A DNA stretch of 63,899 nt, filler included, from Ministeria vibrans ATCC 50519 (Eukaryota > Protista > Filasterea), in assembly GCA_943704425.1 (NCBI GenBank). It is 4 parts of 4 records of this genome, joined end to end, with 100 filler letters (N's around TTAATTAATTAA, not from the genome) between each part and the next. Parts side by side here need not be neighbours in the genome. Positions count along the whole stretch, not along the records: positions 1 to 17,604 come from CALSCP010001414.1; 3 more parts are not named here. One strand, given 5' to 3'. The translations under genes and the position numbers were made by a program. Positions 300 through 16,569 of this stretch are shown in pieces; the first letter of the stretch is position 1; each line of letters starts with the position of its first letter. Below the pieces are notes generated by a model. That model had not been told where the DNA came from. It did no database searches and saw nothing but the letters and a program-made list of their open reading frames with translations.

Positions 300-2323
300 T
301 CACTCGAGAGTCCAATCAAGAGTGCCAAAGAGTAGCCTTGTGACGCGACAAGTGACAAATTCCAGAGTGCCCGCCTCGTATCCGAGAAAAAACTGGTCGG
401 GGAACAGTGTGCTAGCAGAGAGTTCAAATGACGGCGAGCCAGTAAAGTTGTCTAAGGGAATAAGATGAGAAGTAGTTTCCTTCGTGTTTGGGTCGTACAC
501 TCTTGAATGACGGAAAAGTTTGACGGATGGTACGCTCGAATGAGAGTAAAGCGAGTGTCTGTGGCGGGCACATACTGGTGATCGCTGACAAAAAGCTGGT
601 GGGGAGACAAAGAGAGGGAGACAAAGGGTCTGCGGGACTTGGTGGATGGAGAGCCAAAGTACACGTTGGCGGTGGGATTGCAGGTGGTGGAGTCGACGCA
701 AGTGCCGCCCGAGTCACCGCACCAGGAGGAAGGGTTGCAGGTGGAAAGTTGGTTGCAGCCGATTCCGGCGTAGCCGGCGGGACAGATACACTGGTTGACG
801 GAAGGAAGGCAGAACGAGTCAATGGTAATGTTAGACGGGGCGACGCCGGTGGTGGAGCCAACGTAGATCGCGTTGTTGCTGGAAATGGCAAACGTGCTGG
901 GGCTGCCGGACAAAAAGGTCGCGGAGGGAGCACTGCTGGTGCCGTAGTCGACATTGACTGAGGCGATTGAAGGGAGAACCAAGTTTGCACTGTCGAAGAC
1001 ATCGAAGAAGAGAAGTTGTCGTTGAGGTTCGTAGAAGAGCGCTGTCGAGTACATGGAAGAGTTTTGTGAGTCGATGTACTGAAGCCAGAGAACCCTAAGG
1101 TCGAGCGAGAGCTTCATAACAAAAACTTGACGGCCCGCGTCCGGCGTCTGGTCAAAGAGGGTGCCTTCAGAGTAGCCCGCAAAGAAAATGGCATTGAGGT
1201 CGTGTAGGAGCACGACAGAGTGGTGACGCGCCGGCCATTGGTCGTTTACGTTGCCAAACTGTATGGTAGCTTCCACTGCGCTCGTGTCTAGGTTGACCCG
1301 ATACAACACAGTGTCGATACCACCGAAAGGAGCGTCTCCCTGCAAGAGCTGGTCTGTGGCAATAGAGACCACTGCCATAAGGTGCTCTTCGTCGATGGCG
1401 AGTCCATAGGAGCGAACAAACGCTGGCACATTGCGAACGAGCACAATGTCGTCCGTGAGCCGTCCGTTGGTCTCGTCGAGCCGGCTCAAGGTCACGTTGA
1501 AGGGACCCGTGCCCTCGGTGTGTAGAACCAAAGTCGAATTGTTGACGCTGGCAAGTGCTGTGACGTGCGTCGATCTAAGAGACAAACAGTGAACAAAGTG
1601 AAGACACCAATGAGTTTGTTCTTCCTCTTACAGGGAAAAAGCGACGCCGATCAAGGGAGCAACAAGCCAATTGTAGACGGCAACAAACGAGCCGCCTTGG
1701 TCGAGCAGAGAGGCAACGACAAGTCTCGGAGAGGTCGGGTGGGGATGGGCCAAGAGGGCCACGGGCGTGTCGGCATTGGGCAGCGACGGGTGGAACTGCT
1801 GCTGGCGGACCACCTCTGACGCAGTCAGGTTGTACGTGGCAAAGAATGCGCGCGAGCCTGACGCGGGAAAGTAGCTGCCGTCCGAGGTGGACGCGATAAA
1901 GGCGACGTGACGCGACGCGTCGACCGCAACAATTCGCGGCGTCTCGCTCGAAGCCGCTGCGCCCCAGCTGTCGCTCACAGGCAGGTCGCACAGGGCATTG
2001 AGCTCTTCACCTCCGTTGGAGCACGTGATGACGGATGTTGCCCTGATGCTGCCTGAGAGGTGCAGAAGTAAAAAAGTAACATCATTCAAAATTTCATGAG
2101 ACACGCAGTGAGAGCACGGGCAGGAACGGGACGCTCACAGCAGCCAGAGAGTGGCTGTATAAACCCAAGGAAGCCGGAGAGAGAGAGTGTGTGTGTGTGC
2201 TATACGCAGTAACAGCGGCAGGGAACGGGCGCGTTGGTGACGTCTTTGAATCGATTTAAGGTTGGTAAATGGTAAATAATTCCTACCCAGGAGACATGCG
2301 AGCGTAACAAGGAGGGTAAGCAT
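300..2323 (-). CDS. Secreted/cell-surface protein with beta-propeller-like region and EGF-like Cys module; multi-exon, 3' end probably outside window
   Basis: Hydrophobic signal peptide MLTLLVTLACLLG at 2323; ORFs 1628-2104 and 452-1585 carry SBBP-like motifs (IFFAGYSEGTLFDQT..GRQVFVMKL, IYVGSTTG) and EGF-like CICPAGYAGIGC; exon boundaries approximate. Confidence 0.55.
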
Positions 2324-2959: not shown

Positions 2960-4351
2960 CTAAAATCTCGGTAAGCGTATCTTTCTCTTTCCCTTTCCTT
3001 TTTCACATTTTTTCTTCTGCCGCTCATGATGCTCCTCCAGCATTCGCGCAATCTCCATCTGCTTTGGTGACTGAACAAAAGTTTCTTCAGCCTTTCTCCA
3101 ATGCTTCTGTCGAATTCTTAGCGTAGCGTGGAAGCGCGAGTAGTCATAATTATCGCGACGAATGGCATCGGTCACTCGCTCGTCGGCCAACAGCAACTCC
3201 ACAATCTCCTTCTGTGACATATTGCACGCGCAATACAGTGCAAAATTGCCGTCCTGAGTTGGATCGACTGAAGCATCCGCCAGAAGCTCCTCTACCATGT
3301 TCTTGAATCCAGCCTCGCACGCCACATTAAGTGTGTACTGCTTGTCTGGCTTGCCATCGCCTTCTGGTCCATAGCGAAGAAGCTCATGCACAACCTCGAT
3401 GCGGCGGAATTGAATTGCCCACGCCATTGGTGCACATCGATGGTGCGTGAGGTCAGTGCGCGCGTGAACTGCGAGTCGCCTCACATGTTCGACCTCAACG
3501 ACGTCCTCGTATTTGATCAAGTCAACGAGCGACTCTGTCAAATCCATTCGCTCGTCCTCAAGAAGAACATCAAGGCACCCCGTGTGGCGGTGTCTCTCCG
3601 CCCTCCTCATTAACATCACAGATAAAAGTGAGCCGGCTGGCGTAAAGTCGAGAATGCAACGCAAGAGATCCGCTCGTCCCAGCACACAAGCAGCCGTTGC
3701 CGTCTCGTCGGTGATGTCCGCGTAGCGCTCTTGCGTTCGCACCAACTGGCCCCAAAAAGCATGTTCGCAAAGCATTCGTAACATTTCAATGGATTCGCTC
3801 TCGACGGCCAACACAAAAACGATTTGCGCACGATCTGGCAAGTGAAATTGGTCCAAAGAAAAAAGTCGACGCACAACATCAACTTGTCCAGAGTAAACTC
3901 CCAGTTCGAATGCGTTCACCTGAGTAAACCGGGAATGACTGCCACAAAGCAAGTCATGGTGTCTCACCTGGTATGCAGGTTTCTCAATGGGCTCCTCAAG
4001 CGCAAACGGTTGGTGCAACAAAAGGGAGTCGAGGCAGTTGACGAAACCCAACTTGACTGCATCGCCAAGAAGAGCAGAAAGCAAAGCCGGCGACATGGAA
4101 GCAAACAGGGGATGCGGTAGAGGCAAGCGCGATGCTGCAGCAATGTACCGAGTCCAGGCGGCAGGCGACAGACGCAGGAGAAGCTCGACTGCTCTCAACG
4201 AGTGGGTGTTGCTGAGGTTTCGAATGGAACGCCAGCCGTCGCTTGAGGCGGGACGGAACCACTGCTTGCACGTCCAGCGCAGGTGGCATGCAGTCCAAGG
4301 AGTGCACATGGACAGAATGAGGACTACGATTTCGTCAGAGAGGTTCTTCAT
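2960..4351 (-). CDS. F-box plus ankyrin-repeat protein, intronless, 463 aa
   Basis: N-terminal F-box-like NLSDEIVVLILSMC..LRWTCKQW; ankyrin units such as VDPTQDGNFALYCACNMSQKEIVELLLADERV. Confidence 0.8.
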   Translation of the reverse strand: MKNLSDEIVVLILSMCTPWTACHLRWTCKQWFRPASSDGWRSIRNLSNTHSLRAVELLLRLSPAAWTRYIAAASRLPLPHPLFASMSPALLSALLGDAVKLGFVNCLDSLLLHQPFALEEPIEKPAYQVRHHDLLCGSHSRFTQVNAFELGVYSGQVDVVRRLFSLDQFHLPDRAQIVFVLAVESESIEMLRMLCEHAFWGQLVRTQERYADITDETATAACVLGRADLLRCILDFTPAGSLLSVMLMRRAERHRHTGCLDVLLEDERMDLTESLVDLIKYEDVVEVEHVRRLAVHARTDLTHHRCAPMAWAIQFRRIEVVHELLRYGPEGDGKPDKQYTLNVACEAGFKNMVEELLADASVDPTQDGNFALYCACNMSQKEIVELLLADERVTDAIRRDNYDYSRFHATLRIRQKHWRKAEETFVQSPKQMEIARMLEEHHERQKKKCEKGKGKRKIRLPRF

Positions 4352-5802: not shown

Positions 5803-8420
5803 TTACATCACATAATTATTTACAAAATGTACAATGAATCAGAAGGCATGTCACACAGCGTCTCGCTTACTTTCTCTCATCGACGAAATAGCTTGCGTTT
5901 TTCGCGGCGACGCTTTCGTACGTGTCTCCTTGGCCGCCTCGCCCATGGTGCTATCTCTCTTCCTATCCACAGAAGACGTCTCCTTGGCCCCACTCTCTGT
6001 CCTCTTCTTCTTTGGCCGGTGTGCCCCTGATCCCTTACGTCGCGGTGCTGTTTCACCCAGTTTCTCGGGATGTGGTGCAACAGAGATGGCGCCCAGTAGC
6101 GGCCCCTCGTCAAACATGGAACGCATTTTCGCTGGTTTCTCTACAACAGAAGAAGTATTGTGAAGAAACGCAAAAAAACAGAACACAACTTACTTTTCTC
6201 TGGTTTATCCTTCCACTGTACATTCCCCTGTACAACCTCCAGCATCACCAGACTGTCGTCAGACTCGCTGCCTCTGCCCCCCTCTTGCTCCTGTCGCCCT
6301 GTTTCTTCCTCCTCTTGACTCTTTCCCTTGCTGCTCTTCATCACCTTCGTCTTATTGATCGGCTGCTCTTCCCGCTCCCGTTGTCGCACTGGCTCTGCCT
6401 TGGACTTTCCTTTTAATTGCAATTTCCGTCGCTTTCTGTCCTGTCTTCGCCTTCTCTCCTGTTCCCCTTCAGTTCCCTCCACCTCTTCCATCTGCCTCTT
6501 TAACATCATCTTCTTCTCCATCTTCGCCTTCGATCGCCTCCTCCTTTCCCTCTCTTCATTTTCATCTTGGTCTTCCTCCTCTTCCCGTGCTTCTTTCGTC
6601 CCTTTCTCATTCTGTCGCTTCAACTCCTGGTACATCCGTAGAGCCTCAATCTGTTCCGATAAATCCATCTCTACCGAACAAAAAAAAACACATGATTCAT
6701 CACACGTCACTCTCTCTTCCTACGATTGTCTTACCAGACGCACTCAAGTCTTCCACTACATCAGCTACAAGCAGCGAAAAAAAAACGAAAAAATAACGAA
6801 AGAAGACGGTTGAGACAAAATTAAAAGACACAAGAGGTCATAAAATCGCAGTACTGTTCAGCTGGAAGAGAGCACGTAGAGCGGCGGCGCGCAAAGGACG
6901 CACTGACCGTTTATTGGGCAGATCTGCCGACGCCCCCAACTCGGCCAGCTCACTCACGATCTCTCCCTCTTCGCTGTCACCCTCCATGTCATCCTCGTCT
7001 GCATCATCTTCCTTCTCTTCGCTTGTATCGTAGTCCATATCTATAGCTTTGTTGCGGTGCGTTCTTCCGCCCCTCTTATCATCTGTCCCTTTCCGCCCCA
7101 CCACTACACAAACACATACACAAGCGAATGATCATGACAACATGTTGTTTCTTTCTCCCTCATTTCTCTCTTCTCGTTCGTGTTCAGTGTTTTGTTAATT
7201 ACTTACGGCACTGCGAGAGCAACAATTTCGCTCGATCGTTGGGCACCGTCAACTTCATGGGACTGTGGGAGACGACGGACCGGGGACGTCCTTTGGGCGC
7301 ACCTAAAACCAAACAATACAAAACAAAGCAAAAAAAAAATCAGATGCGAAGTGAACAAGCTACGCTACTTAGAGACGCATACCCTTCCAATATGTTTTTC
7401 CACTGAGACGCTCCTTGATGGCGGTAAGCAGCCAAGAGGGCGCTGCAGCCGGTTGAAAGACCAGATCCAGTACGTGTTGTAGTGCATCAGGGGTGATGTT
7501 GGGCTCAGAGGCAAGCATGCGTTCTCGAACTACATGCCGGTAGATATGGGCGAGCATGACGCTGTCGTGGCTCGATGGGAAACGCTGCGGATGTGCCGAG
7601 CGAAGGTGTGCTGAAAGAAGTGAGGTGTCGCCAACAGACTTGGAGCAGAGGGCGCAGATGAGGGCGAAGAAACTCGGTGGATGGAAGCGTATCATGTGTT
7701 GGTGAGCACCGTCGTTGGAATCGACCTGACGGAACGGATTGTTCCAGCACGGCTCACCGTCAGCTCGTGTGCCCAAACACACGCATGTTTCATCACGCAG
7801 AATCACAATGCGATGGTTGCTGTCGCTCGGATTGACCAGAATGTCGCCGAGATGATCCTCAACACATGCCTGGAACAAGCTCTCGCCAAACGCGACGGGT
7901 ACACTCTGAGGCGCCCACAGATCCTCAACGCCTCCCGCCGCCTCGCTGTACATGGCGCGCCATGCGCCCCCAGGGAGGTGCGGCGTCGCTCTCGGCGCGT
8001 CCTCATCTGTGTCGCCGTTGCGTTGCGTCTCGTCAAAATCATCGCGCGCGTACATGTCGGCGTGACACGCCTCCAGGTGTCTCGCCAGCTTGGTTGTCGA
8101 CTCGACGGCGTGGTGGCAGTGGACGCATCGCAGGGCATCCAGGCTGTGGGGGTGGAAGTCAACGAAATGCGAATGGATCAAAGCAACGGGAAATGCCGCG
8201 CTGGCGCACTGCGTGCCGTCGACGCGCGAGTATCTGCACTCACACATCACCCACGGGTCCCCCCCCTTCAGCGTGAACAGACCCGACATCGACCAATGTT
8301 TCACAACCTGTCAAAAAGTGTCAGTAAAACAGAAGACAATAAAAGAGGGAAGGGAGAGCGAACCTTGGGTGTGGTGCTTGTCGGATGAACACAGATGGTT
8401 GGAAGGACACGGCACAGCGT
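4396..8420 (-). CDS. Multi-exon nuclear protein: two paired zinc-finger modules, AT-hook-like PKGRPR, long Lys/Glu-rich low-complexity tail
   Basis: Exon 7383-8307 has two C-x8/9-C..H-x4-HP..CxxC-x12-H-x4-H modules; splices in frame (K-G|APKGRPR..QC|LVGRKG) to downstream charged exons; start codon and 3' end uncertain, tail could be a separate gene. Confidence 0.6.
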
Positions 8421-8598: not shown

Positions 8599-9898
8599 TC
8601 AGTCAACCAGGTGATACTCAAGGACCATAGGAAGAGGCTAAAACAAGCAAGTAGAGAAGGCGAGAACGTAAACAAAGTACGCACACAAACTAAAAAATGA
8701 ATAAAATATCAAAATTCTTACGCGTGATTTCCATCTCTTCTCGCGAATCTTCGAATATCGCGTCTTCACCGGAATATCGTTTCCTCCGTTACAGCGAAAC
8801 GCAATCTTCTCCGCGTCCGACACACCACATGCCTCAGCAACTATGTTGCGCAGCTTTTTCAACGTCTTGTGACTCGTAATCTGAAAAGGAAAATGAAAAT
8901 GTAAGCACCAATATGCACTCGCACAAAACTGATCATGATTCGTACCATAAACACGTTGGGAGAGATTGGATGAAGTGACGAGCCACTAGTAGGGGAAACA
9001 AGTACCTGTACCATCGCCTGCTCAGAAAGGCTTTCATCGTCCTCCACCGTCTTCTCTCGTGCCACAGACCCTCCTCCCCCTTCTCCCCTTTCTTCTTCTT
9101 TTTCTTCTTCCTTTTCCGCTTCAATCGTCCTCTGCCTCTTCAGAGTCTTCTTCGTCTCACTATCCTCCTCCTCCCCCTCACCCTCCTCTTCTTTCATGCC
9201 CCCGCTGCGTTTCCGTGCTTTCTCACCATGTCCATCACCACCACTAATGATAGCCTTTTTTGTCTTTCGCTCCTTTTCGACGTCACTCCCTTCCTGTTTG
9301 TGCTTCTTCGCACGCCCATCCTTCACTTGTAGTCGAATCTGTGCCTCTTCCTGTTGCATCCGCTCCACCGCCTCCTCTGCTTCACGTGTCTCCCTAGCCT
9401 CTGCCAACAGTGCTCGTTTCCGCACTCGCTCCGCCTTCTCTTGTGCTCTTCGTTGTGCCGCTCTCTCTTCCTCCTCAAGTGCTCGTTTCTTTGCCTCCGC
9501 ACGCTTCTTCTCCTCTTTCTGTCGTTTCTGCCACTTGCGCTGATCTTCTGCCGCCAACAGTCTTGCCGTCTCGGCTGCCTCAGCCGCCGCCCGTTGCAAA
9601 TCCGCATCGCTACTCTCCTCGCTCGCACTACTCCCACTCACAATCGCACTCGCAACATTCTTCTTCGCTGTGGTATTCAATGACATTGTCACAGATACCA
9701 CAGCCTCAGATCCTTTCGAGGGTTGCTGTTCTCCCACCTCCCCCGCCAATCGCTCTGCAATCCTTTGAATCAGCGATGCCATTGAACGTTTAATCGTTAA
9801 AGTTCCCCCACGCCTCTTCTTCTTCTTCGCTGCTACGATCACATTCACCAACGAGTTATCCTCCTTCAAAATCTCTTGCACAGACACCTGGAAAAAAA

Positions 9899-9929
<31 letters not shown>

Positions 9930-12900
9930 CACATAAGGTGAATAAAATCCATCTCATTATGATCTCAAAAGGGTATTACTCTGGAATCCGCCGGAATACT
10001 TTCAATGCCGTGTTCAGAAGCAAAGAGTACACGCGCCGCCAGCTCCTCGGCGGCCACTCTCGGCACCAGTTTTCTCACCACATCCTCCAGTAGATGATCT
10101 CGAGTCACAGACTCCATTGGCTGCAGCTGAATGCACAATAAAAAGTTCAAGGAGTTCGTCGGAAGCGCTCCTTTCTCGTTTGTACCTCTTGAAGAGAAAT
10201 CGGACAGTCTGGAAAGGGACAGGTGCGATTGACGATGGCACCATTGGCGTTGCGCGGTGACACATGACTCACAAAACACGACCGGCAGAAGTGGTGCATA
10301 CATTCGCGCACAGTCACCGGATCAATAAGGTACCTGAGCACCAACAGAACAACATCAATATTATTATTATTATAATAGTTTTATTATTATTATTATTGTT
10401 ATTATTATTGTTATTATTATTGTTATTGTTATTATTATTGTTATTGTTATTATTATTGTTATTGTTATTACTAATTATTATTATTATTATTATTCGTCGC
10501 GTCTAGTCAATAAACTGCTGCTTGTCTATGGATCAATAAGGTTCGTACCCAAAACAAGCACCGCATGCAAGGTATTCGTTGACGAGCTCAATGTTCGCCA
10601 TGACCATATCGTCGACAATGATGGCGTGCTGGCTGTGCGCAAGAACCTGAATGCGAAGGAGAAAGAAACACAATCGGAAAAAGTGTCGCAATCTTTTATT
10701 TTATTTTATTTTTAAAAAAAATGGTTATGAGACGTACCCCATTGAATGCCAGTGAGGCTGTAGACGACGACGGGGACGAAGAGACTGCAGGAGCCGTGGT
10801 GGCACTTGCCGCAGTCGAAAGAGTCTTAGTGGTCTTGGCAGCGGTTGACGGAGAACGGACACCGTGTCGCCGGGAGAGAGATGATAGTGACAACAATGAT
10901 GATGGTGGTGGTGATGATGGTGGTGGTGGTGACGATGATGACGATGCTATCCCGAGAGCAGTGCGTGGTGATGCCTTGTTGGGCCGTGATAAAGAGTCCG
11001 GTTCGTCGTTGATGGTGGCGTCGTCAAAGGCGAGACGCACACCTGTCGACGTAGCGGCAGCGCGTGTACTACTACTACGACTACTAGGACCACTACAAAT
11101 ACTGCTGCTAGTACTACTACTACTATTGTTGTTGTTGTTGGGAGTGCTTGGTGCGCGCCGCTTCTTCGACGCCGCCGTGGTAGCAGCGGTGATAGAGGCA
11201 GCCGAGGCAGCCGACGCGGCAATGTGAAGGTGACGCATGCTTTTGGTGGGCAAGGGCGAAACAAGGTCGCCCGAGTCGATGGAGCTCGTGTCGCTCTGTT
11301 TGCGCGTGAGCTTTGTTGGTGTTAAACCGGAGGGCATTGGAGACTGCAGGTGGCGCTTCCAGAGACTTTGCCAGAGCGAGATTTGAGCGAGATAGTCGTT
11401 TGAGGGTTTGTGAACGTCCCAGAGAGAGGCGATGTCGGAGTCGGAGAGGCCGCGCTCGCGCTTGAGATACGCAGCATAGCCCTCTTTGTGATCGACTCGC
11501 GTGTCTTTTGCCGGGTCGGCGATGAGGTCGACGTGGTCCGTCATGAGGTGATTCTTGAGGAAACGCGTGTTGGAGATGGACTCGTTGCAGACGCCGCAGA
11601 CGAGACGGGCGCAATGCAGCGGGTGGTACGATGAGAAGTGGTTGGCGAGCGAGCGCTGGTAGAACGGATTGGTGCAGCATGGGGTACCGTCGAGACGCGT
11701 GGCGAGGCACACGATGGTGCCGTGGGGTAGCACAACGACGTCAAAGTGGTGTGAGAACGATGGCTGGGCTGCCACCGACTCGAGCAGGTCCATACACTGC
11801 AAACGAAGTGACTCACCAAAGAGAGCGGGTACGGGCGCCGTCTCCCACACGCCGCGCACGAGGCGGTTGAGTGTCGCTTCGTCGCTGATGCCTTCGTTCT
11901 GCAGTCGATTGACAACACACTTGTCATATGCAAAGTTCCACATGGAGCCAAAGGAGAAGTTGGTCGAGTCGGCGTCGTCAAAAAGCTGTGCAAGGGCGTC
12001 CTTATGTTCGGTGAACAGGTGGGGCTGCAGATCGCCCGTCGTGCCGACATGCACATCGCAAAAGGCACAGTAGATGCCATACTTGCAGTCGGGGTGGTAG
12101 TGTGAGAAATGATGAGCAATGCGCTCGGCGAAAAAGGGTGGGCCCGCGCAGGTGCGACCAAAGTCGTCGATCATGTGACAAATGACTTGGTCTCGCGTGG
12201 CATCCGACTTGAGCACGAACGAGACCTTTTGGCGAGAGGCAATCGCGTCGCGTTGGAGCGCCACCCAGTCGGCGAATCGCCGAGGCACTCGCTCCGTGAA
12301 CCAAAGCCTGGTGATCTCGTCGTCAATGGAAGTCTCATCTACACCATCGTCACTCAGCTTGCGACGCACCGCCTCCTCGTACGCCCCGTGCCACTCGCTC
12401 CTTTTCTTCGCGCTCGTGCCTCTCGCAGTTGTAGTGGTAGTAGTAGATGATGATGGTGCTGTGGTTGTTGTAGCCGTGCGGCCCTTGGCGCTTCCATGGA
12501 GCAAACTGGCCGGCGTTGCGGCTGTGACGGTGATGGAGGTCGTGTCGCTGTCGTCGAAAAGTTGGAAGGGAAACTGAGCGGGGTGACAGCACGCCAAGTG
12601 TGTGGCAAGTGAACTGGGACAGAGAGTATCGTGGCAGATGACACAGTGAATGCGGTAGAGCGAGCGTGGATGGTAGTTTTCAAAGTGCTTCTCGACGGCA
12701 TCGGGGTGAAACGGGGCAGAGCGACACTGGTCGCCGTCGACCGTGATGCGACAGCACTTGACAAGACCACTCACGAGAAGAACCCCCTCAAACGAGGGCG
12801 CCGGCTCGCTATCATCGTCGATACACAATGCAGACTTGCACGAGACACTCTGGCTTGCTGCTGCGGTCTGGCTGTCGCACAGGGCGAGAGTGGTGAGCAA

Positions 12901-13150
12901 ATGCGCACTGCCCGTTGTGCTTCGACGCGGAATCGACACTGTCAGCTCTTGAGGGACAAGTGTCGCTGCAGCCGCCGCGACCGAACCGGCCTGTACCGCG
13001 ATACGACGGTACGACCTTTTGCCCAAGGGTGAGTCGTCTGGGAGAAGGATGAATCACGAGAACATTAAAGATTGACACTTTTGACATACCGATTCGTGAG
13101 ATGCGAGGCGACACTGATTCGGCTGGTTCAGTCGATCGAGACCGCCTCAT
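8599..13150 (-). CDS. PCGF/BMI1-like Polycomb RING-RAWUL protein with N-terminal triple paired zinc-finger extension
   Basis: Spliced translation: LVNEYLACGACFGYLIDPVTVRECMHHFCRSC..CPFPDC..RDHLLEDVVRKLVP (BMI1: [45 protein letters not shown]); C-terminal RAWUL-like LHPISPNVFMITSHKTLKKLRNIVAEACGVSDAEKIAFRCNG..RWKSRPLPMVLEYHLVD*; junctions from the ATG to the RING and within the RAWUL checked as GT-AG and in frame. Confidence 0.8.
10358..10494. repeat. (TTA/TTG)n trinucleotide microsatellite inside the RING-splitting intron
   Basis: Directly visible. Confidence 0.9.
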
Positions 13151-13344: not shown

Positions 13345-14230
13345 ATGGTGTTGTACTACCTTTCGACTGCGACGGAGCCGCCGACTGTGATCTTTGCGGG
13401 ACGTGACAAGCACGAGAGTAAGGAAACATGCAGATCATTTCTCATTTTGCTCACGCATCGTCCAATTAGATGAAGATTTGATCAAATGGGGCTGGCCCGA
13501 AGACGTGTGGTAAGAAGGAGAGAGGGACAAGAGCGAGCGAGCGCGACTCAGCGTGGCTTTGGCGCAGGTTTCACGTCGACAAGTTCTCGTCGGCACATCT
13601 GTACGTGCGTCTCGCCAAAGGACAGACCATTGCGGACATTACGCCGGCTCTTCTTGAAGATGTGTGTCAATTGACAAAGCACAACAGTATCAAGGGCTCG
13701 AAAGAACCCAAAGTTGCGTAAGTGTGCTGATTGGTCATCAAACAAGTACTGACTCAACTGTGCTTGTGCAATCGCCGCACAGCATTGTCTACACCATGTG
13801 GAGCAACCTGAAGAAGACGAACGGAATGGAGGTGGGCCAGGTTGCCTTTCACAAAGAAAAGCTGGTACAATATACATTGTGTGTGTGTGAGAGAAGAGAA
13901 TCAATGCGAATGTGTCGCACACTTGTGCAGGTTAAAAAGGCAACGGTAGAACGTGACACCACAGTGATCAACCGGCTGAACAAGACCAAGACGGAGCGGT
14001 ATCCGGTTGACTTGCGTTCCGAACGAGAGGCACGAGACGCAGCGGAACGCGAAGAGCAACGCGAAGCGAAGAAACAAGAGCGCAAAGAGGAAGAGGAGCG
14101 AATGCGATTGGAGTCAGAACAGCGCGACCTGAAGGCCTATCGGGGAGTGGTTGACAACGAGGAAGGGATGCGGTCTAATGTGGACATGGCCGCAATGAGT
14201 GTCGATGAGTATGAGGATGATTTTATGTAA
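13345..14230 (+). CDS. CCDC25: CCDC25 (NFACT-R/DUF814 domain protein), multi-exon
   Basis: Spliced: [84 protein letters not shown]. Confidence 0.92.
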
Positions 14231-14281: not shown

Positions 14282-16569
14282 TTAGGAAGACTGCATAAGT
14301 GGCGACGATTCGTCGTTGATGACCAATTTGGTGTGTTGTTGCGGTGTTGGCGCGGTATCGCCCGCGCTACTGTGTGCATTGACACGAGCAGCAGCGCGTC
14401 TGAGGGTATGGGCAACAAAGAGGAAGGAGACAACAAGGGCGAGAGTGTAGACACAGAGCGAACCAAAGAAGACTTCGGAGGCAAAGGCAAAGGAGCGCAG
14501 CTGCACAAGGAGACCGCCCGCAATAGGTCCAAGAATGGAGCCCAAGGAGGTGGCGGACGAGAGAAGACCGCCCAGAACGGAGTAGACGGCCTCCGCCTGA
14601 CGGGTCAGTGTGTCGTCGGTGTCAGCGTGGTCATCGCAGTCGTCGCTGCCCCTGTTGTTGCTGTTGTTGCCTGGTGGTTGTGGCGTTGTGGTTCTAGTTG
14701 TCGGTGTGGTTGAAGCTGGTGTAGAGTCGTCGTTGGCGCTATGAGCGTCTGCCCCGGCTGGTGTGAGAGAGGGCGAGGCAAAGGTGGGCGGAGCACTGCG
14801 CGTCGAATAGAGGGATTGAGTATCGGCGGCAGTGTATGGGATAACATTCACTGTCACGTTGTATTCGTCGTTGTCGTCGTCGTCGTCGTCGTCGTCATCG
14901 TCGTAGAACAATTCGTCGTTGCTGGCGTGTGGGATGGGGGATGGGGGTTGTGTGAGGACGTGTGATGATGTAGTGCAGTTGGCGTCAGTGTGAGGATCGT
15001 GTGCAGGAATAAGAGTGCGTCCGGCGGGTGAGTGGAGAAGGTCGTGGTGGAGAATGTCGCGAGGGAAGCGGCCCGAGAGAGTGACAGTGGCACTGCGGCC
15101 GTGGACGTGCATGGTGTGTGAGTGGAGGCGCTGCTTCTCGAGTTGAGCTGCCGTGAGAGGAGCTTCCTGGTTGAGACGGAAGCGGGTTGTGAGGATGTGC
15201 ATCATGGCGGGAAGAATGGGAACCATGCCTAGAGCACCGCCAATACCAATAATGACCAGGGCGACAGCAGGGATGCCAACAGAGGGTGGCAGGAATGACA
15301 TGAGAGGTGGCAAGGGTCCAATGAGGGCGAGGCCGAGAGCCATCAGGGAGAAGCCCATAGTGAGGGTGAGGGGAGCGCCAATGCGGTCCGAAATGAGCCC
15401 CGCAATGGGCGACATGATAGCGTAGCTGAGACTCTGGGCGAGAAAAAGGAGACCGACGGTGCCCGGGGAGACGCCGTAGCGGGCCTCAACGGCCGATGAC
15501 AGGGTGGGTTCGAGAAAGCTGAACGCGGCGTAATTGAAGACACCGCCACATAGCAGACACCAGACGATGGGCTGACGCAGAGCAAGTGATGTGGGCGAGA
15601 GCTCAGTCTGGGCGTCGGCATCGTAGGCGTCGTCGTTGGTGTCGCCCGTCGAGTTGACGTCGGGCCGGATGTACACGTAGAGAAGCGGCAAGAGCAGGAG
15701 TAGTGCCGAGCCCGTGGTGAAGAATGGAAGACGGAACCCCCCCGCCTGGTAGAGAAAGCCTCCAATGGGGCTGCCGGCCATCAGACCGAGACCGCCAAAG
15801 GTCTCAAGAATGCCGATGGTGGTGCCGGTGTTGGAGGTGAAGTCAGACGCGACAATGGAGAAGGAGCCGGTCTCGGAGAAGGCAACGCCGACACCCTGCA
15901 CCGAGCGGATGACAATGGCAATGGCTAGCATTGGTGTGCCGTCTGGCACGAGGTACAGGCACCCAAAGCTGATGGTGGCGATGGCATTCAGAAACTCGCC
16001 GAGAAACAACACTCGGCGTCGTCCAAGACGAAGAACCCGCGCACCGACAAAGGGAGCGACCACAAACTGCACCAGAGCAAACATGGCAAAGATGACGCTG
16101 ACTTGGAACTCCGAGAGACCGTGTGCGGCGCCGAACTGGAGAGAGCGCGTGATTGTGTTATGTGTGGGACGATGTGAAACTTTTTCCATACCTGCGGGAA
16201 GAATGGCGCCATAATGGAGAAGACGCTGTTGCTGAGAAGATTTACAATGGATAGCGCTGCAACGGGAGAGTCTGGGGTGAGTCATTGTCGCGTCATGTGG
16301 ACGAGTTGATCAGATCAATAAAATGCAATACCGCACAGACAAACGAACCGATCACGGGTGTAGCCGAAGCAAGTCGACTCGGGCGGTGGCGGCAGCGTGA
16401 TGACTCTAGCCTTGCGTGCAATTTCGAGCTGCGTCATGATGGAGGCCACATCAACAGTGGTGTCGCCACCCACCACCGAATGGCGCCGCTGCCTCTCGCC
16501 CTCGGGTCGAATCGGTTCGCCGTGCACGCGAAACCGACTGCTGCGCGTGTACCTCCCCGAGGCGGGCAT
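14282..16569 (-). CDS. MFS transporter, SLC18B1-like, with long low-complexity loop before last helices
   Basis: About 12 hydrophobic helices; motifs SIMAPFFP, IRSVQGVG, GILETFGGLGLMAGSPIGGFLYQAGGFRLPF, SLGSILGPIAGG; short 5' exons from ATG 16569. Confidence 0.8.

What the first reader, a model, noticed from the sequence alone, without database searches (positions are those of the whole stretch)
8599..13150. Polycomb PCGF/BMI1-like RING-RAWUL protein fused to a triple zinc-finger array
Seen: the zinc-finger exon splices in frame (FNG|VLAHSQ) into a PCGF-type RING, then a charged coiled region and a terminal RAWUL-like domain ending PLPMVLEY. Known: PCGF proteins are normally compact RING plus RAWUL subunits of PRC1 that are targeted by separate partners (CBX, KDM2B, MGA/E2F6). 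Inference: a self-targeting PRC1 subunit carrying its own DNA-reading module, possibly working with the neighbouring RING-less zinc-finger paralog. This is my best candidate for an undescribed system in the window.
Basis: partly seen in the sequence, partly recalled or inferred. Interest (0 to 1): 0.82.

Follow-up and report, generated by a model that had tools for sequence, protein, structure and literature searches.

The report
Polycomb RING gene with zinc-finger exon
An unidentified single-celled eukaryote has a Polycomb PCGF/BMI1-type gene whose upstream exon, if the predicted in-frame splice is real, adds three double zinc-finger units to the protein; this architecture appears in none of the Polycomb papers checked here, but no transcript confirms it and nothing shows that the fingers read DNA.

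Summary
On the minus strand, eight GT..AG exons (13150 to 8599) join in frame into 1297 codons. They encode three double zinc-finger units, a Ser/Thr/Pro-rich tail, a RING split over two exons, a post-RING helix, a charged linker and a ubiquitin-like end.

The RING and its flank are PCGF-type: the best solved-structure matches are BMI1, PCGF5, PCGF6 and PCGF1, well ahead of RING1B. The RAWUL call is indirect. Pfam does not hit the window's exons, but a compact paralog's matching exon scores 33.0 bits (cut-off 33.5) and aligns with the window's exon (z 4.2) with the same last intron.

The fusion is plausible but unproven. It has a consensus donor and acceptor, no ATG between them, and paralog similarity that starts six residues before the first ATG of the RING exon. 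A two-gene model remains open, because that ATG sits at a normal PCGF start.

The finger units belong to a lineage-restricted C2H2-like family with at least 113 matches in this genome. All other members found are standalone. Standalone finger cores are basic (+4 to +8). Those of this gene are not (-4 to +2), so "DNA-reading" is not supported. Verdict: probably a new variant of a known kind, of moderate interest.

The parts
13090..13150 (-). Putative first coding exon (ATG at 13150, 61 nt, donor GTATGT)
   Evidence: A 52-nt GT..AG intron joins it in frame to the zinc-finger exon. That exon has no in-frame ATG before its first finger.
10738..13037 (-). Zinc-finger exon: three double-finger units plus helical spacers, then a Ser/Thr/Pro/Ala-rich tail
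   Evidence: The regex scan and alignment A1 show all eight zinc ligands invariant in 24 units. The frame stays open to the donor GTACGT at 10737.
12583..12756 (-). Double zinc-finger core 1
   Evidence: CCHH + CCHH pattern. Net charge -1.
12004..12180 (-). Double zinc-finger core 2
   Evidence: Same pattern. The AlphaFold2 model of the unit has pLDDT 86. Net charge -4.
11533..11709 (-). Double zinc-finger core 3
   Evidence: Same pattern. Sub-threshold Pfam zf-Di19 match at 18.7 bits. Net charge +2.
10738..11358 (-). Low-complexity Ser/Thr/Pro/Ala-rich tail of the finger exon, with a KKRR patch
   Evidence: Seen in the translation. The standalone family members examined end about 10-40 residues after their last unit, whereas this frame runs about 260 codons further.
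10647..10737 (-). Predicted intron 1 (91 nt), the junction on which the fusion depends
   Evidence: Donor GTACGT, pyrimidine tract and acceptor cattcag, both phase 0. It contains no ATG. If retained, a stop at 10696 ends a finger-only protein. AATAAA-like runs lie at that stop.
10549..10646 (-). RING exon a: N-terminal arm and the first Cys pair (C-G-A-C)
   Evidence: Aligns with the paralog's exon (Smith-Waterman score 58, z 11). The similarity starts 6 residues before the first in-frame ATG at 10607.
10186..10333 (-). RING exon b: C-x-H-x2-C-x2-C ... C-x4-C
   Evidence: Pfam zf-C3HC4 at 28.6 bits. Best solved-structure matches are the RING2-BMI1 chimera, PCGF5, PCGF6, PCGF1 and BMI1.
9980..10126 (-). 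Post-RING helix exon (LVP motif)
   Evidence: 51% identical to both paralogs. Weak but collinear matches to PCGF5 and BMI1 residues 64-101.
8946..9887 (-). Charged Lys/Glu/Arg-rich linker; its last ~25 residues are the probable first strands of the ubiquitin-like domain
   Evidence: Seen in the translation. No Pfam family. The donor GTACGA at 8945 is preferred over the donor at 9005, because the extra residues align with coding sequence of the paralog.
8722..8880 (-). RAWUL-like exon
   Evidence: Aligns end to end with the paralog exon that hits Pfam RAWUL (score 36, z 4.2, 5 of 2000 shuffles). There is no direct Pfam hit.
8599..8637 (-). Last exon (PLPMVLEYHLVD) and stop codon
   Evidence: A phase-0 intron lies just before it, at the same place as in the paralog: RWKSR|PLPMVLEY against RWRQS|HKPLELTY.
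7369..8304 (-). Neighbouring open frame with two units of the same finger family
   Evidence: It is the second-best match of the finger exon in the genome (39% identity, E 8e-17). It may itself splice onward.

Best explanation
This is a real PCGF/BMI1-family gene, one of at least three paralogs in the genome. Its mature transcript most likely begins upstream at 13150, so that three C2H2-like double zinc-finger units and a long disordered tail precede the RING.

Inferred mechanism:
- The RING and post-RING helix pair with another RING protein (a RING1 homolog or a PCGF paralog) to form a PRC1-type H2A ubiquitin ligase core.
- The C-terminal ubiquitin-like domain binds accessory subunits.
- The N-terminal finger array gives the complex an extra binding surface in cis. 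Its ligand is unknown: nucleic acid, chromatin or protein.
- Retaining the 91-nt intron would instead give a finger-only protein that stops at 10696, so both forms may exist.

Shown here: the domains, their order, the reading frames and the PCGF type of the RING. Inferred: the splicing of the finger exon to the RING exon, the RAWUL fold and every biochemical step.
For: - Gene model: eight exons join in frame into 1297 codons, with GT..AG introns of 52-215 nt. The donors are GTACG, GTACA, GTAAG, GTAAT and GTATG; the acceptors are (c)attcag, ttttcag and similar.
- PCGF type: the RING exon's best solved-structure matches are PCGF proteins (E 7e-7 to 2e-3), against RING1B at 0.03-0.2. The paralog with RING and flank in one exon aligns to BMI1 24-101 and PCGF5 24-98 at E 2e-8. 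The window's exons are about 50% identical to it and to the second paralog.
- Coding sequence extends upstream of the RING exon's first ATG: similarity to the compact paralog begins 6 residues before it (z 3.6, 12 of 2000 shuffles).
- No other start is available: there is no ATG between the acceptor and the finger frame's stop.
- Intron 1 resembles the gene's other introns: its acceptor context matches intron 3, and it has a pyrimidine tract.
- The finger frame needs an upstream ATG exon of its own, and that exon fits in frame.
- Unlike the standalone family members examined, the finger frame stays open about 260 codons past the last unit, up to the donor.
- RAWUL link through the paralog.
Against: - No transcript was available, and no ortholog with the same architecture was found.
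- The RING exon has an in-frame ATG 16 residues before the first RING cysteine, a typical PCGF start.
- AATAAA-like runs sit at the stop that follows the donor.
- The compact paralog shows that a short N-terminus is the family norm here.
- Pfam RAWUL does not hit the window's exons.
- The last RING ligand pair is C-x4-C, not C-x2-C.
- The finger cores are not basic.
- No RING1 homolog was recognised among the 20 best RING hits.
Confidence: 0.55

Rival explanations
1. There are two separate tandem genes. One is a zinc-finger protein with a long disordered tail that reads through the donor and stops at 10696. The other is an ordinary compact PCGF that starts at the ATG at 10607. Its 5' untranslated region would either fit in the ~90 nt between them, or come from a non-coding first exon inside the upstream gene's tail.
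For: - The ATG at 10607 lies 16 residues before the first RING cysteine, as in ordinary PCGF proteins (one search shows the exon).
- AATAAA-like runs lie at the read-through stop.
- The compact paralog on C2553/C202 has no finger array; the gene upstream of it encodes a WD40 protein.
- All other finger-family members found, in this genome and in 1.84 billion representative proteins, are standalone.
Against: - Only ~90 nt would be left for a 3' end, a promoter and a 5' UTR. The two other same-strand gaps measured are about 270-310 nt.
- A strong acceptor with a pyrimidine tract at 10647 implies an upstream donor in the same transcript, and the nearest consensus donor is in frame.
- Paralog similarity extends upstream of the ATG.
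- Other genes' 3' flanks show no consistent AATAAA near the stop.
Confidence: 0.33
2. The locus is a decaying or non-functional chimera: a finger-family copy landed next to a PCGF duplicate, and neither part works as in PRC1.
For: - The RING has an atypical C-x4-C last ligand pair.
- The finger cores are non-basic, unlike the standalone family.
- Pfam does not recognise the RAWUL.
- Several family copies elsewhere carry stop codons.
Against: - All 1297 codons are open, and all 24 finger zinc ligands and all 8 RING ligands are intact.
- Splice sites are intact at all seven introns.
- The post-RING helix is well conserved with both paralogs.
Confidence: 0.07
3. An assembly artefact joins unrelated pieces of a draft or metagenome-derived genome.
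For: - The assembly has 2860 contigs.
- A 136-nt (AAT)n repeat lies inside the gene, at 10359-10494.
- Paralog genes are broken at repeat-rich contig ends.
Against: - The finger exon and the first RING exon are only 91 nt apart, with no repeat between them.
- The (AAT)n repeat lies between the two halves of one RING, and those halves fit in frame.
Confidence: 0.03

Closest known systems
PCGF/BMI1 family (animal PCGF1-6, plant BMI1/DRIP)
   Same: It has the C3HC4 RING with the G-Y-x-I-D signature and the post-RING helix with the LVP motif. A C-terminal ubiquitin-like domain ends in a PLP..L.Y strand. The best solved-structure matches are BMI1, PCGF5, PCGF6 and PCGF1.
   Different: About 790 residues would precede the RING, carrying three double zinc-finger units. 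A charged linker of about 290 residues separates the RING from the ubiquitin-like domain. The last RING ligand pair is spaced C-x4-C. PMC10638273, a survey of 178 eukaryotes, describes PCGF and RING1 as an N-terminal RING plus a C-terminal RAWUL.
Drosophila Psc / Su(z)2 (own knowledge, not tested here)
   Same: These are PCGF-family proteins enlarged by long, charged, disordered regions that add chromatin-binding activity in cis.
   Different: Their extension is C-terminal and has no zinc fingers. Here the extra part is N-terminal and made of folded zinc modules plus a disordered tail.
Targeting of variant PRC1 in trans (KDM2B with PCGF1, MGA/E2F6 with PCGF6, PHO/YY1 with RYBP; own knowledge)
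   Same: The idea is that a zinc-containing or DNA-binding module brings a PCGF-RING core to chromatin.
   Different: In the known systems the module is a separate subunit, bound through the RAWUL domain or accessory proteins. Here it would be part of the same polypeptide, and its ligand is unknown.
Tandem C2H2 zinc fingers, Di19-like pairs (Pfam PF05605, PF00096)
   Same: Each unit has two CCHH sites with x12 and x4 spacings and a predicted strand-strand-helix shape. The unit profile hits many classical C2H2 arrays over positions ~18-78. The Foldseek list is almost entirely DNA-bound C2H2 pairs.
   Different: The first finger has a long C-x8/9-C knuckle. Each pair is followed by a family-specific helical segment of about 70 residues that has no structural match. 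No Pfam model reaches its cut-off. All fold matches are non-significant (E 0.4 or worse).

Membership tests
PCGF (Polycomb group RING finger) | C3HC4 RING with all eight zinc ligands | tested here: met
   C-x2-C lies in exon 10549-10646. C-x-H-x2-C-x2-C and the final pair lie in exon 10186-10333. Pfam zf-C3HC4 scores 28.6 bits against a cut-off of 21. Deviation: the last pair is C-x4-C.
PCGF (Polycomb group RING finger) | RING closer to PCGF than to RING1 or other RING families | tested here: met
   phmmer against PDB gives PCGF5 at 1e-5, PCGF6 at 1e-5, and PCGF1 and BMI1 at 1e-3, against RING1B at 0.03-0.2. Both paralogs give the same ranking. No tree with curated references could be built.
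PCGF (Polycomb group RING finger) | Post-RING helix that packs against the partner RING (LVP motif) | tested here: met
   The exon 9980-10126 matches PCGF5 and BMI1 residues 64-101 collinearly but weakly (E ~0.8-1). It is 51% identical to the paralog whose RING plus helix aligns to BMI1 24-101 at E 2e-8.
PCGF (Polycomb group RING finger) | C-terminal RAWUL ubiquitin-like domain | tested here: inconclusive
   Pfam PF16207 does not hit the window's exons. The matching exon of the paralog scores 33.0 bits against a cut-off of 33.5. It aligns with the window exon at z 4.2 and shares the last intron position. The domain is split over three exons and was not folded, because the joined model was left out. 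PMC10638273 notes that the Pfam RAWUL model is insensitive.
PCGF (Polycomb group RING finger) | Heterodimer with RING1 and H2A mono-ubiquitination | not testable with these tools
   No RING1-like gene was recognised among the 20 best of 45 RING hits. RINGs split by introns would be missed.
C2H2-type zinc finger | CCHH ligand pattern, conserved across the family | tested here: met
   C11, C21, H34, H39, C48, C51, H64 and H69 are invariant in 24 units.
C2H2-type zinc finger | Recognised by a curated C2H2 model above its cut-off | tested here: not met
   Only sub-threshold zf-Di19 matches were found: 18.7 bits in the window, 25.3 bits in P0002, against a cut-off of 27.5.
C2H2-type zinc finger | Strand-strand-helix fold of each finger | tested here: inconclusive
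   The AlphaFold2 models (pLDDT 86 and 79) place a helix over each His pair. The Foldseek hits are nearly all tandem C2H2 domains, but at E 0.4 or worse.
C2H2-type zinc finger | Sequence-specific DNA binding | not testable with these tools
   Finger-core net charge is -4, -1 and +2 here, against +4 to +8 in standalone members. This is a weak argument against DNA binding, not a test.
Single-gene fusion (finger array + PCGF) | In-frame consensus splice sites joining the two parts | tested here: met
   Donor GTACGT at 10737, acceptor cattcag ending at 10647, both phase 0, intron of 91 nt.
Single-gene fusion (finger array + PCGF) | Transcript spanning the junction | not testable with these tools
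   No transcript data were available. A search with the joined junction sequence was left out, because it has no reference.
Single-gene fusion (finger array + PCGF) | Same architecture in paralogs or orthologs | tested here: inconclusive
   The paralog on C2553/C202 has no array. The paralog on C144 is cut by the contig start. No relative was found in protein or metagenome collections.

The most novel reading that the evidence does not exclude
The fusion is a Rosetta-stone link. The expanded, lineage-restricted zinc-finger family (at least 113 matches, basic cores, standalone three-unit proteins) would be a set of sequence-specific recruiters of a PRC1-type ubiquitin ligase. This would parallel the KRAB zinc-finger/TRIM28 system, possibly aimed at repeats. 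The gene in the window would be a member that became hard-wired to the PCGF subunit. The genome would then run a PRC1 system targeted by DNA readers, perhaps without PRC2, since no VEFS-box was found.
Probability: 0.1. Interest if true: 0.75.

Novelty: new variant of a known kind. Interest (0 to 1): 0.45.

Why it matters
How PRC1 finds its targets is still debated. In animals and plants the answer lies in separate partner proteins. A PCGF subunit that carries its own zinc-finger array would be a natural experiment: it would show that cis-targeting is viable, and it would point to the standalone finger family as candidate partners of PRC1 in this lineage. The evidence is thin. It rests on one draft genome of an unidentified protist and an unverified splice. 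The fingers of this particular gene have also lost the basic charge that the rest of the family has.

Tried and rejected
- Word-index protein search with the finger exon found nothing. Low-complexity words may have crowded the candidate list, so this blank is weak.
- The same search with the paralog's RING and flank found only an identical fragment from a metagenome (P0001, ENA ERZ23497376). It gave no reference PCGF set, so no RING phylogeny and no profile-profile RAWUL test could be run.
- A metagenome scan with the post-RING helix alignment found no relative.
- The solved-structure search with the RAWUL-like exon returned only TAL-effector repeats. These come from many tiny summed matches with no stretch passing alone, and I rejected them as an artefact.
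- Fold searches with the whole finger unit gave nothing above chance (Foldseek E above 2, Z 4 or less).
- BLASTP of the window's C-terminal region against the paralog was run on a range that wrongly included an intron. I replaced it with the exon-level test.
- The idea that the finger family is a transposon was rejected. DNA similarity between copies (84-93%) stops at the ends of the open frame.
- The search for a second finger-PCGF pair at the C144 paralog failed. Its upstream exon is not in the assembly.
- The organism could not be identified. The sample accessions were not found in the paper library, no LHC genes were found, and the Atlas gave no taxa.
- The joined 1297-residue model was never searched or folded. 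All searches were done exon by exon.
Full report
**Setting.** The window is contig C1414 of a 29.7-Mb, 2860-contig eukaryotic assembly. It has short GT..AG introns and many microsatellites. Six-frame searches found no light-harvesting genes and no SUZ12 VEFS-box, but absence in a draft genome with split genes is weak evidence. The organism stays unidentified. Identical or related pieces occur only in metagenome and run assemblies: ENA SCHR19-1 scaffolds and Logan SRR23272272. None of those accessions appears in the paper library.

**Observation.** Eight exons on the minus strand join in frame:

| Exon | Coordinates |
|---|---|
| e0 | 13150-13090 |
| e1 | 13037-10738 |
| e2 | 10646-10549 |
| e3 | 10333-10186 |
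| e4 | 10126-9980 |
| e5 | 9887-8946 |
| e6 | 8880-8722 |
| e7 | 8637-8602, stop at 8601-8599 |

- All seven introns are GT..AG and 52-215 nt long. The coding sum is 3891 nt, or 1297 codons.
- I checked phases exon by exon and translated each exon apart.
- The long frame e1 has no in-frame ATG before its first finger. It therefore needs the upstream ATG exon, which fits through a 52-nt intron.

**The PCGF part.**
- *RING.* It is split. C-G-A-C lies in e2, and C-x-H-x2-C-x2-C plus a final C-x4-C lie in e3.
- *Family scan.* Pfam sees a generic C3HC4 RING.
- *Solved structures, e3.* The best matches are a RING2-BMI1 chimera (over its BMI1 half), PCGF5, PCGF6, PCGF1 and BMI1, at E 7e-7 to 2e-3. 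RING1B follows at 0.03-0.2.
- *Solved structures, e4.* It matches PCGF5 and BMI1 residues 64-101 weakly but at the collinear place.
- *Paralogs.* The genome holds two more PCGF paralogs.
  - One runs from the end of C2553 into the start of C202, across a CT-repeat gap that sits in an intron; the two ends fit in frame. It is compact, about 290 residues. It shares the introns that split the RING and that follow the RING exon, the post-RING helix and the RAWUL exon; its other introns lie at different places. The gene upstream of it encodes a WD40 protein, so it has no finger array.
  - The other, on C144, carries the RING half and the helix in a single exon. It aligns to BMI1 24-101 and PCGF5 24-98 at E about 2e-8, but its 5' part is cut off by the contig start.
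- *Identity to paralogs.* The window's e4 is 51% identical to both paralogs.
- *Conclusion.* The RING and its flank are PCGF-type, not RING1-type.

**The RAWUL question.**
- *Direct test.* Pfam RAWUL finds nothing in the window's exons.
- *Genome-wide six-frame scan.* It hits only C202 and a WDR48-like gene.
- *Paralog link.* The C202 exon scores 33.0 bits, just under the 33.5 cut-off, although it is only part of the domain. The window's e6 aligns with it end to end: Smith-Waterman score 36, z 4.2, reached by 5 of 2000 shuffles.
- *Shared intron.* Both genes have a phase-0 intron right after R-W-x-x-x and before a last exon that reads like the final RAWUL strand.
- *Literature.* PMC10638273 reports that the Pfam model often misses RAWUL domains outside animals and plants.
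- *Judgement.* I take the domain as probable, not shown. It spans three exons, so it could not be folded under the rule against joined models.

**The finger part.**
- *Units.* e1 holds three units. Each has two CCHH sites followed by a helical segment of about 70 residues.
- *Models.* AlphaFold2 on a 24-unit alignment gives pLDDT 86, with one helix over each His pair. The whole unit has no structural match. The finger pair modelled alone gives only non-significant Foldseek rows, but nearly all of them are tandem C2H2 DNA-binding domains such as CTCF, Tramtrack, ZNF217 and WT1.
- *Profile search.* A profile of the unit was scored against 1.84 billion representative proteins. Six of them (P0002-P0005 and the fragments P0018 and P0084) are family members; the four larger ones match the profile end to end. 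All are standalone, none has a RING, and those traced (P0002, P0003) come from a metagenome and a sequencing-run assembly. The remaining listed hits are mostly long multi-finger proteins matching only positions ~18-78; five of the six I scanned are classical C2H2 arrays and one is a BED-finger protein.
- *Family size.* In the window's own genome the family has at least 113 matches. Many are in three-unit proteins of about 460 residues. Their DNA similarity of 84-93% stops at the ends of the open frame, so they look like a gene family and not a transposon.
- *Charge.* The finger cores of these standalone members carry net charge +4 to +8. The three cores of the window's gene carry -4, -1 and +2, and the neighbour's carry -1 and 0.

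**One gene or two?**

*For one gene:*
- Intron 1 has the same donor type and almost the same acceptor context as the gene's other introns, plus a pyrimidine tract.
- There is no ATG between the read-through stop at 10696 and the acceptor.
- Similarity to the compact paralog starts six residues upstream of e2's first ATG (z 3.6, 12 of 2000 shuffles). This argues that translation enters e2 from upstream.
- Only ~90 nt would separate two genes, where the other same-strand gaps measured are ~270-310 nt.
- The finger frame, unlike the standalone members examined, stays open ~260 codons beyond the last unit, up to the donor.

*For two genes:*
- e2's ATG at 10607 lies 16 residues before the first RING cysteine, a normal PCGF start.
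- AATAAA-like runs lie at the read-through stop.
- The compact paralog and every other family member show that both parts exist on their own.
- No relative with the fusion was found. These blanks are weak, because gene calls in those collections are made open frame by open frame.

I put the fusion at about 0.55, two genes at about 0.33, and the rest on decay or artefact. Retaining the intron would give a finger-only isoform, so both products may coexist.

**The neighbour.** The open frame at 7369-8304 is the closest relative of e1 after one copy on C1339. It may also be a 5' exon. A GTATGC donor four codons before its stop and a ttttag acceptor give an in-frame 79-nt intron. That intron leads into an exon with an AT-hook-like G-R-P core, followed by charged open pieces with no Pfam family. 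If this holds, both tandem finger exons are N-terminal modules of larger charged proteins, which fits the one-gene reading. It is not verified.

**Comparison with what is known.** A survey of 178 eukaryotes describes PCGF and RING1 as an N-terminal RING plus a C-terminal RAWUL, and its text mentions no fusion or added domain for them. Paper searches for RAWUL with C2H2 or zinc finger turned up no such architecture. Known targeting of PRC1 by zinc or DNA-binding modules works in trans (own knowledge: KDM2B, MGA/E2F6, PHO). The finding is therefore best filed as a new variant of a known kind, conditional on the splice.

**Verdict.** Interest is 0.45.

Noticed in passing
G000, many contigs (e.g. 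L008, L010-L018, L045-L050): A lineage-restricted double zinc-finger family has at least 113 six-frame matches in this genome. Typical members are intronless proteins of ~460 residues with three units and basic finger cores. Copies are 84-93% identical in DNA, but only within the open frame, and several carry stop codons.
   Followed up: partly
window 7203-7383 and on to ~4400, minus strand: The neighbouring finger frame may splice onward. The donor GTATGC is at 7382 and the acceptor ends at 7303, in frame. The next exon has an AT-hook-like GRP core and is followed by long charged, low-complexity open pieces with no Pfam family.
   Followed up: partly
L006 7859-8810 (G000:C2553) and L019 126-448 (G000:C202): The end of C2553 and the start of C202 are two halves of one compact PCGF gene. 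They are separated by a CT-rich repeat inside an intron, and the phase-1 donor and acceptor fit in frame.
   Followed up: yes
L021 (G000:C144) and L022 (ENA ERZ23497376 scaffold_7537): A third PCGF paralog has its RING half and post-RING helix in one exon, an acidic linker and a short ubiquitin-like end. Its 5' part is missing at the contig start. A nearly identical piece, differing at one residue, occurs in a public metagenome.
   Followed up: partly
window 10359-10494: An (AAT)n microsatellite of ~45 copies lies inside the intron that splits the RING.
   Followed up: no
L020 (G000:C1887:3389-6580): A WD40 protein has a C-terminal ubiquitin-like tail (WDR48/UAF1-like by its look). It is the only other place in the genome that the Pfam RAWUL model touches (26 bits).
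   Followed up: no
window 8722-8880: The RAWUL-like exon gives E 3e-11 against TAL-effector repeat proteins in the solved-structure search. The score comes purely from summing many tiny repeat matches, with no stretch passing alone. It is a search artefact worth knowing about.
   Followed up: yes
whole genome G000: Six-frame searches found no SUZ12 VEFS-box and no chlorophyll a/b-binding genes. If this holds, the organism is non-photosynthetic and may keep PRC1-type genes without PRC2. A draft genome with split genes makes this weak.
   Followed up: no
window 452-1585, 2960-4351, 13664-14230, 14282-16285: Other genes in the window are an EGF-like cysteine-rich secreted-type frame, an ankyrin-like 463-residue frame, a short Lys/Glu-rich protein on the plus strand that diverges from the PCGF gene's start, and a 667-residue membrane-transporter-like frame.
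   Followed up: no
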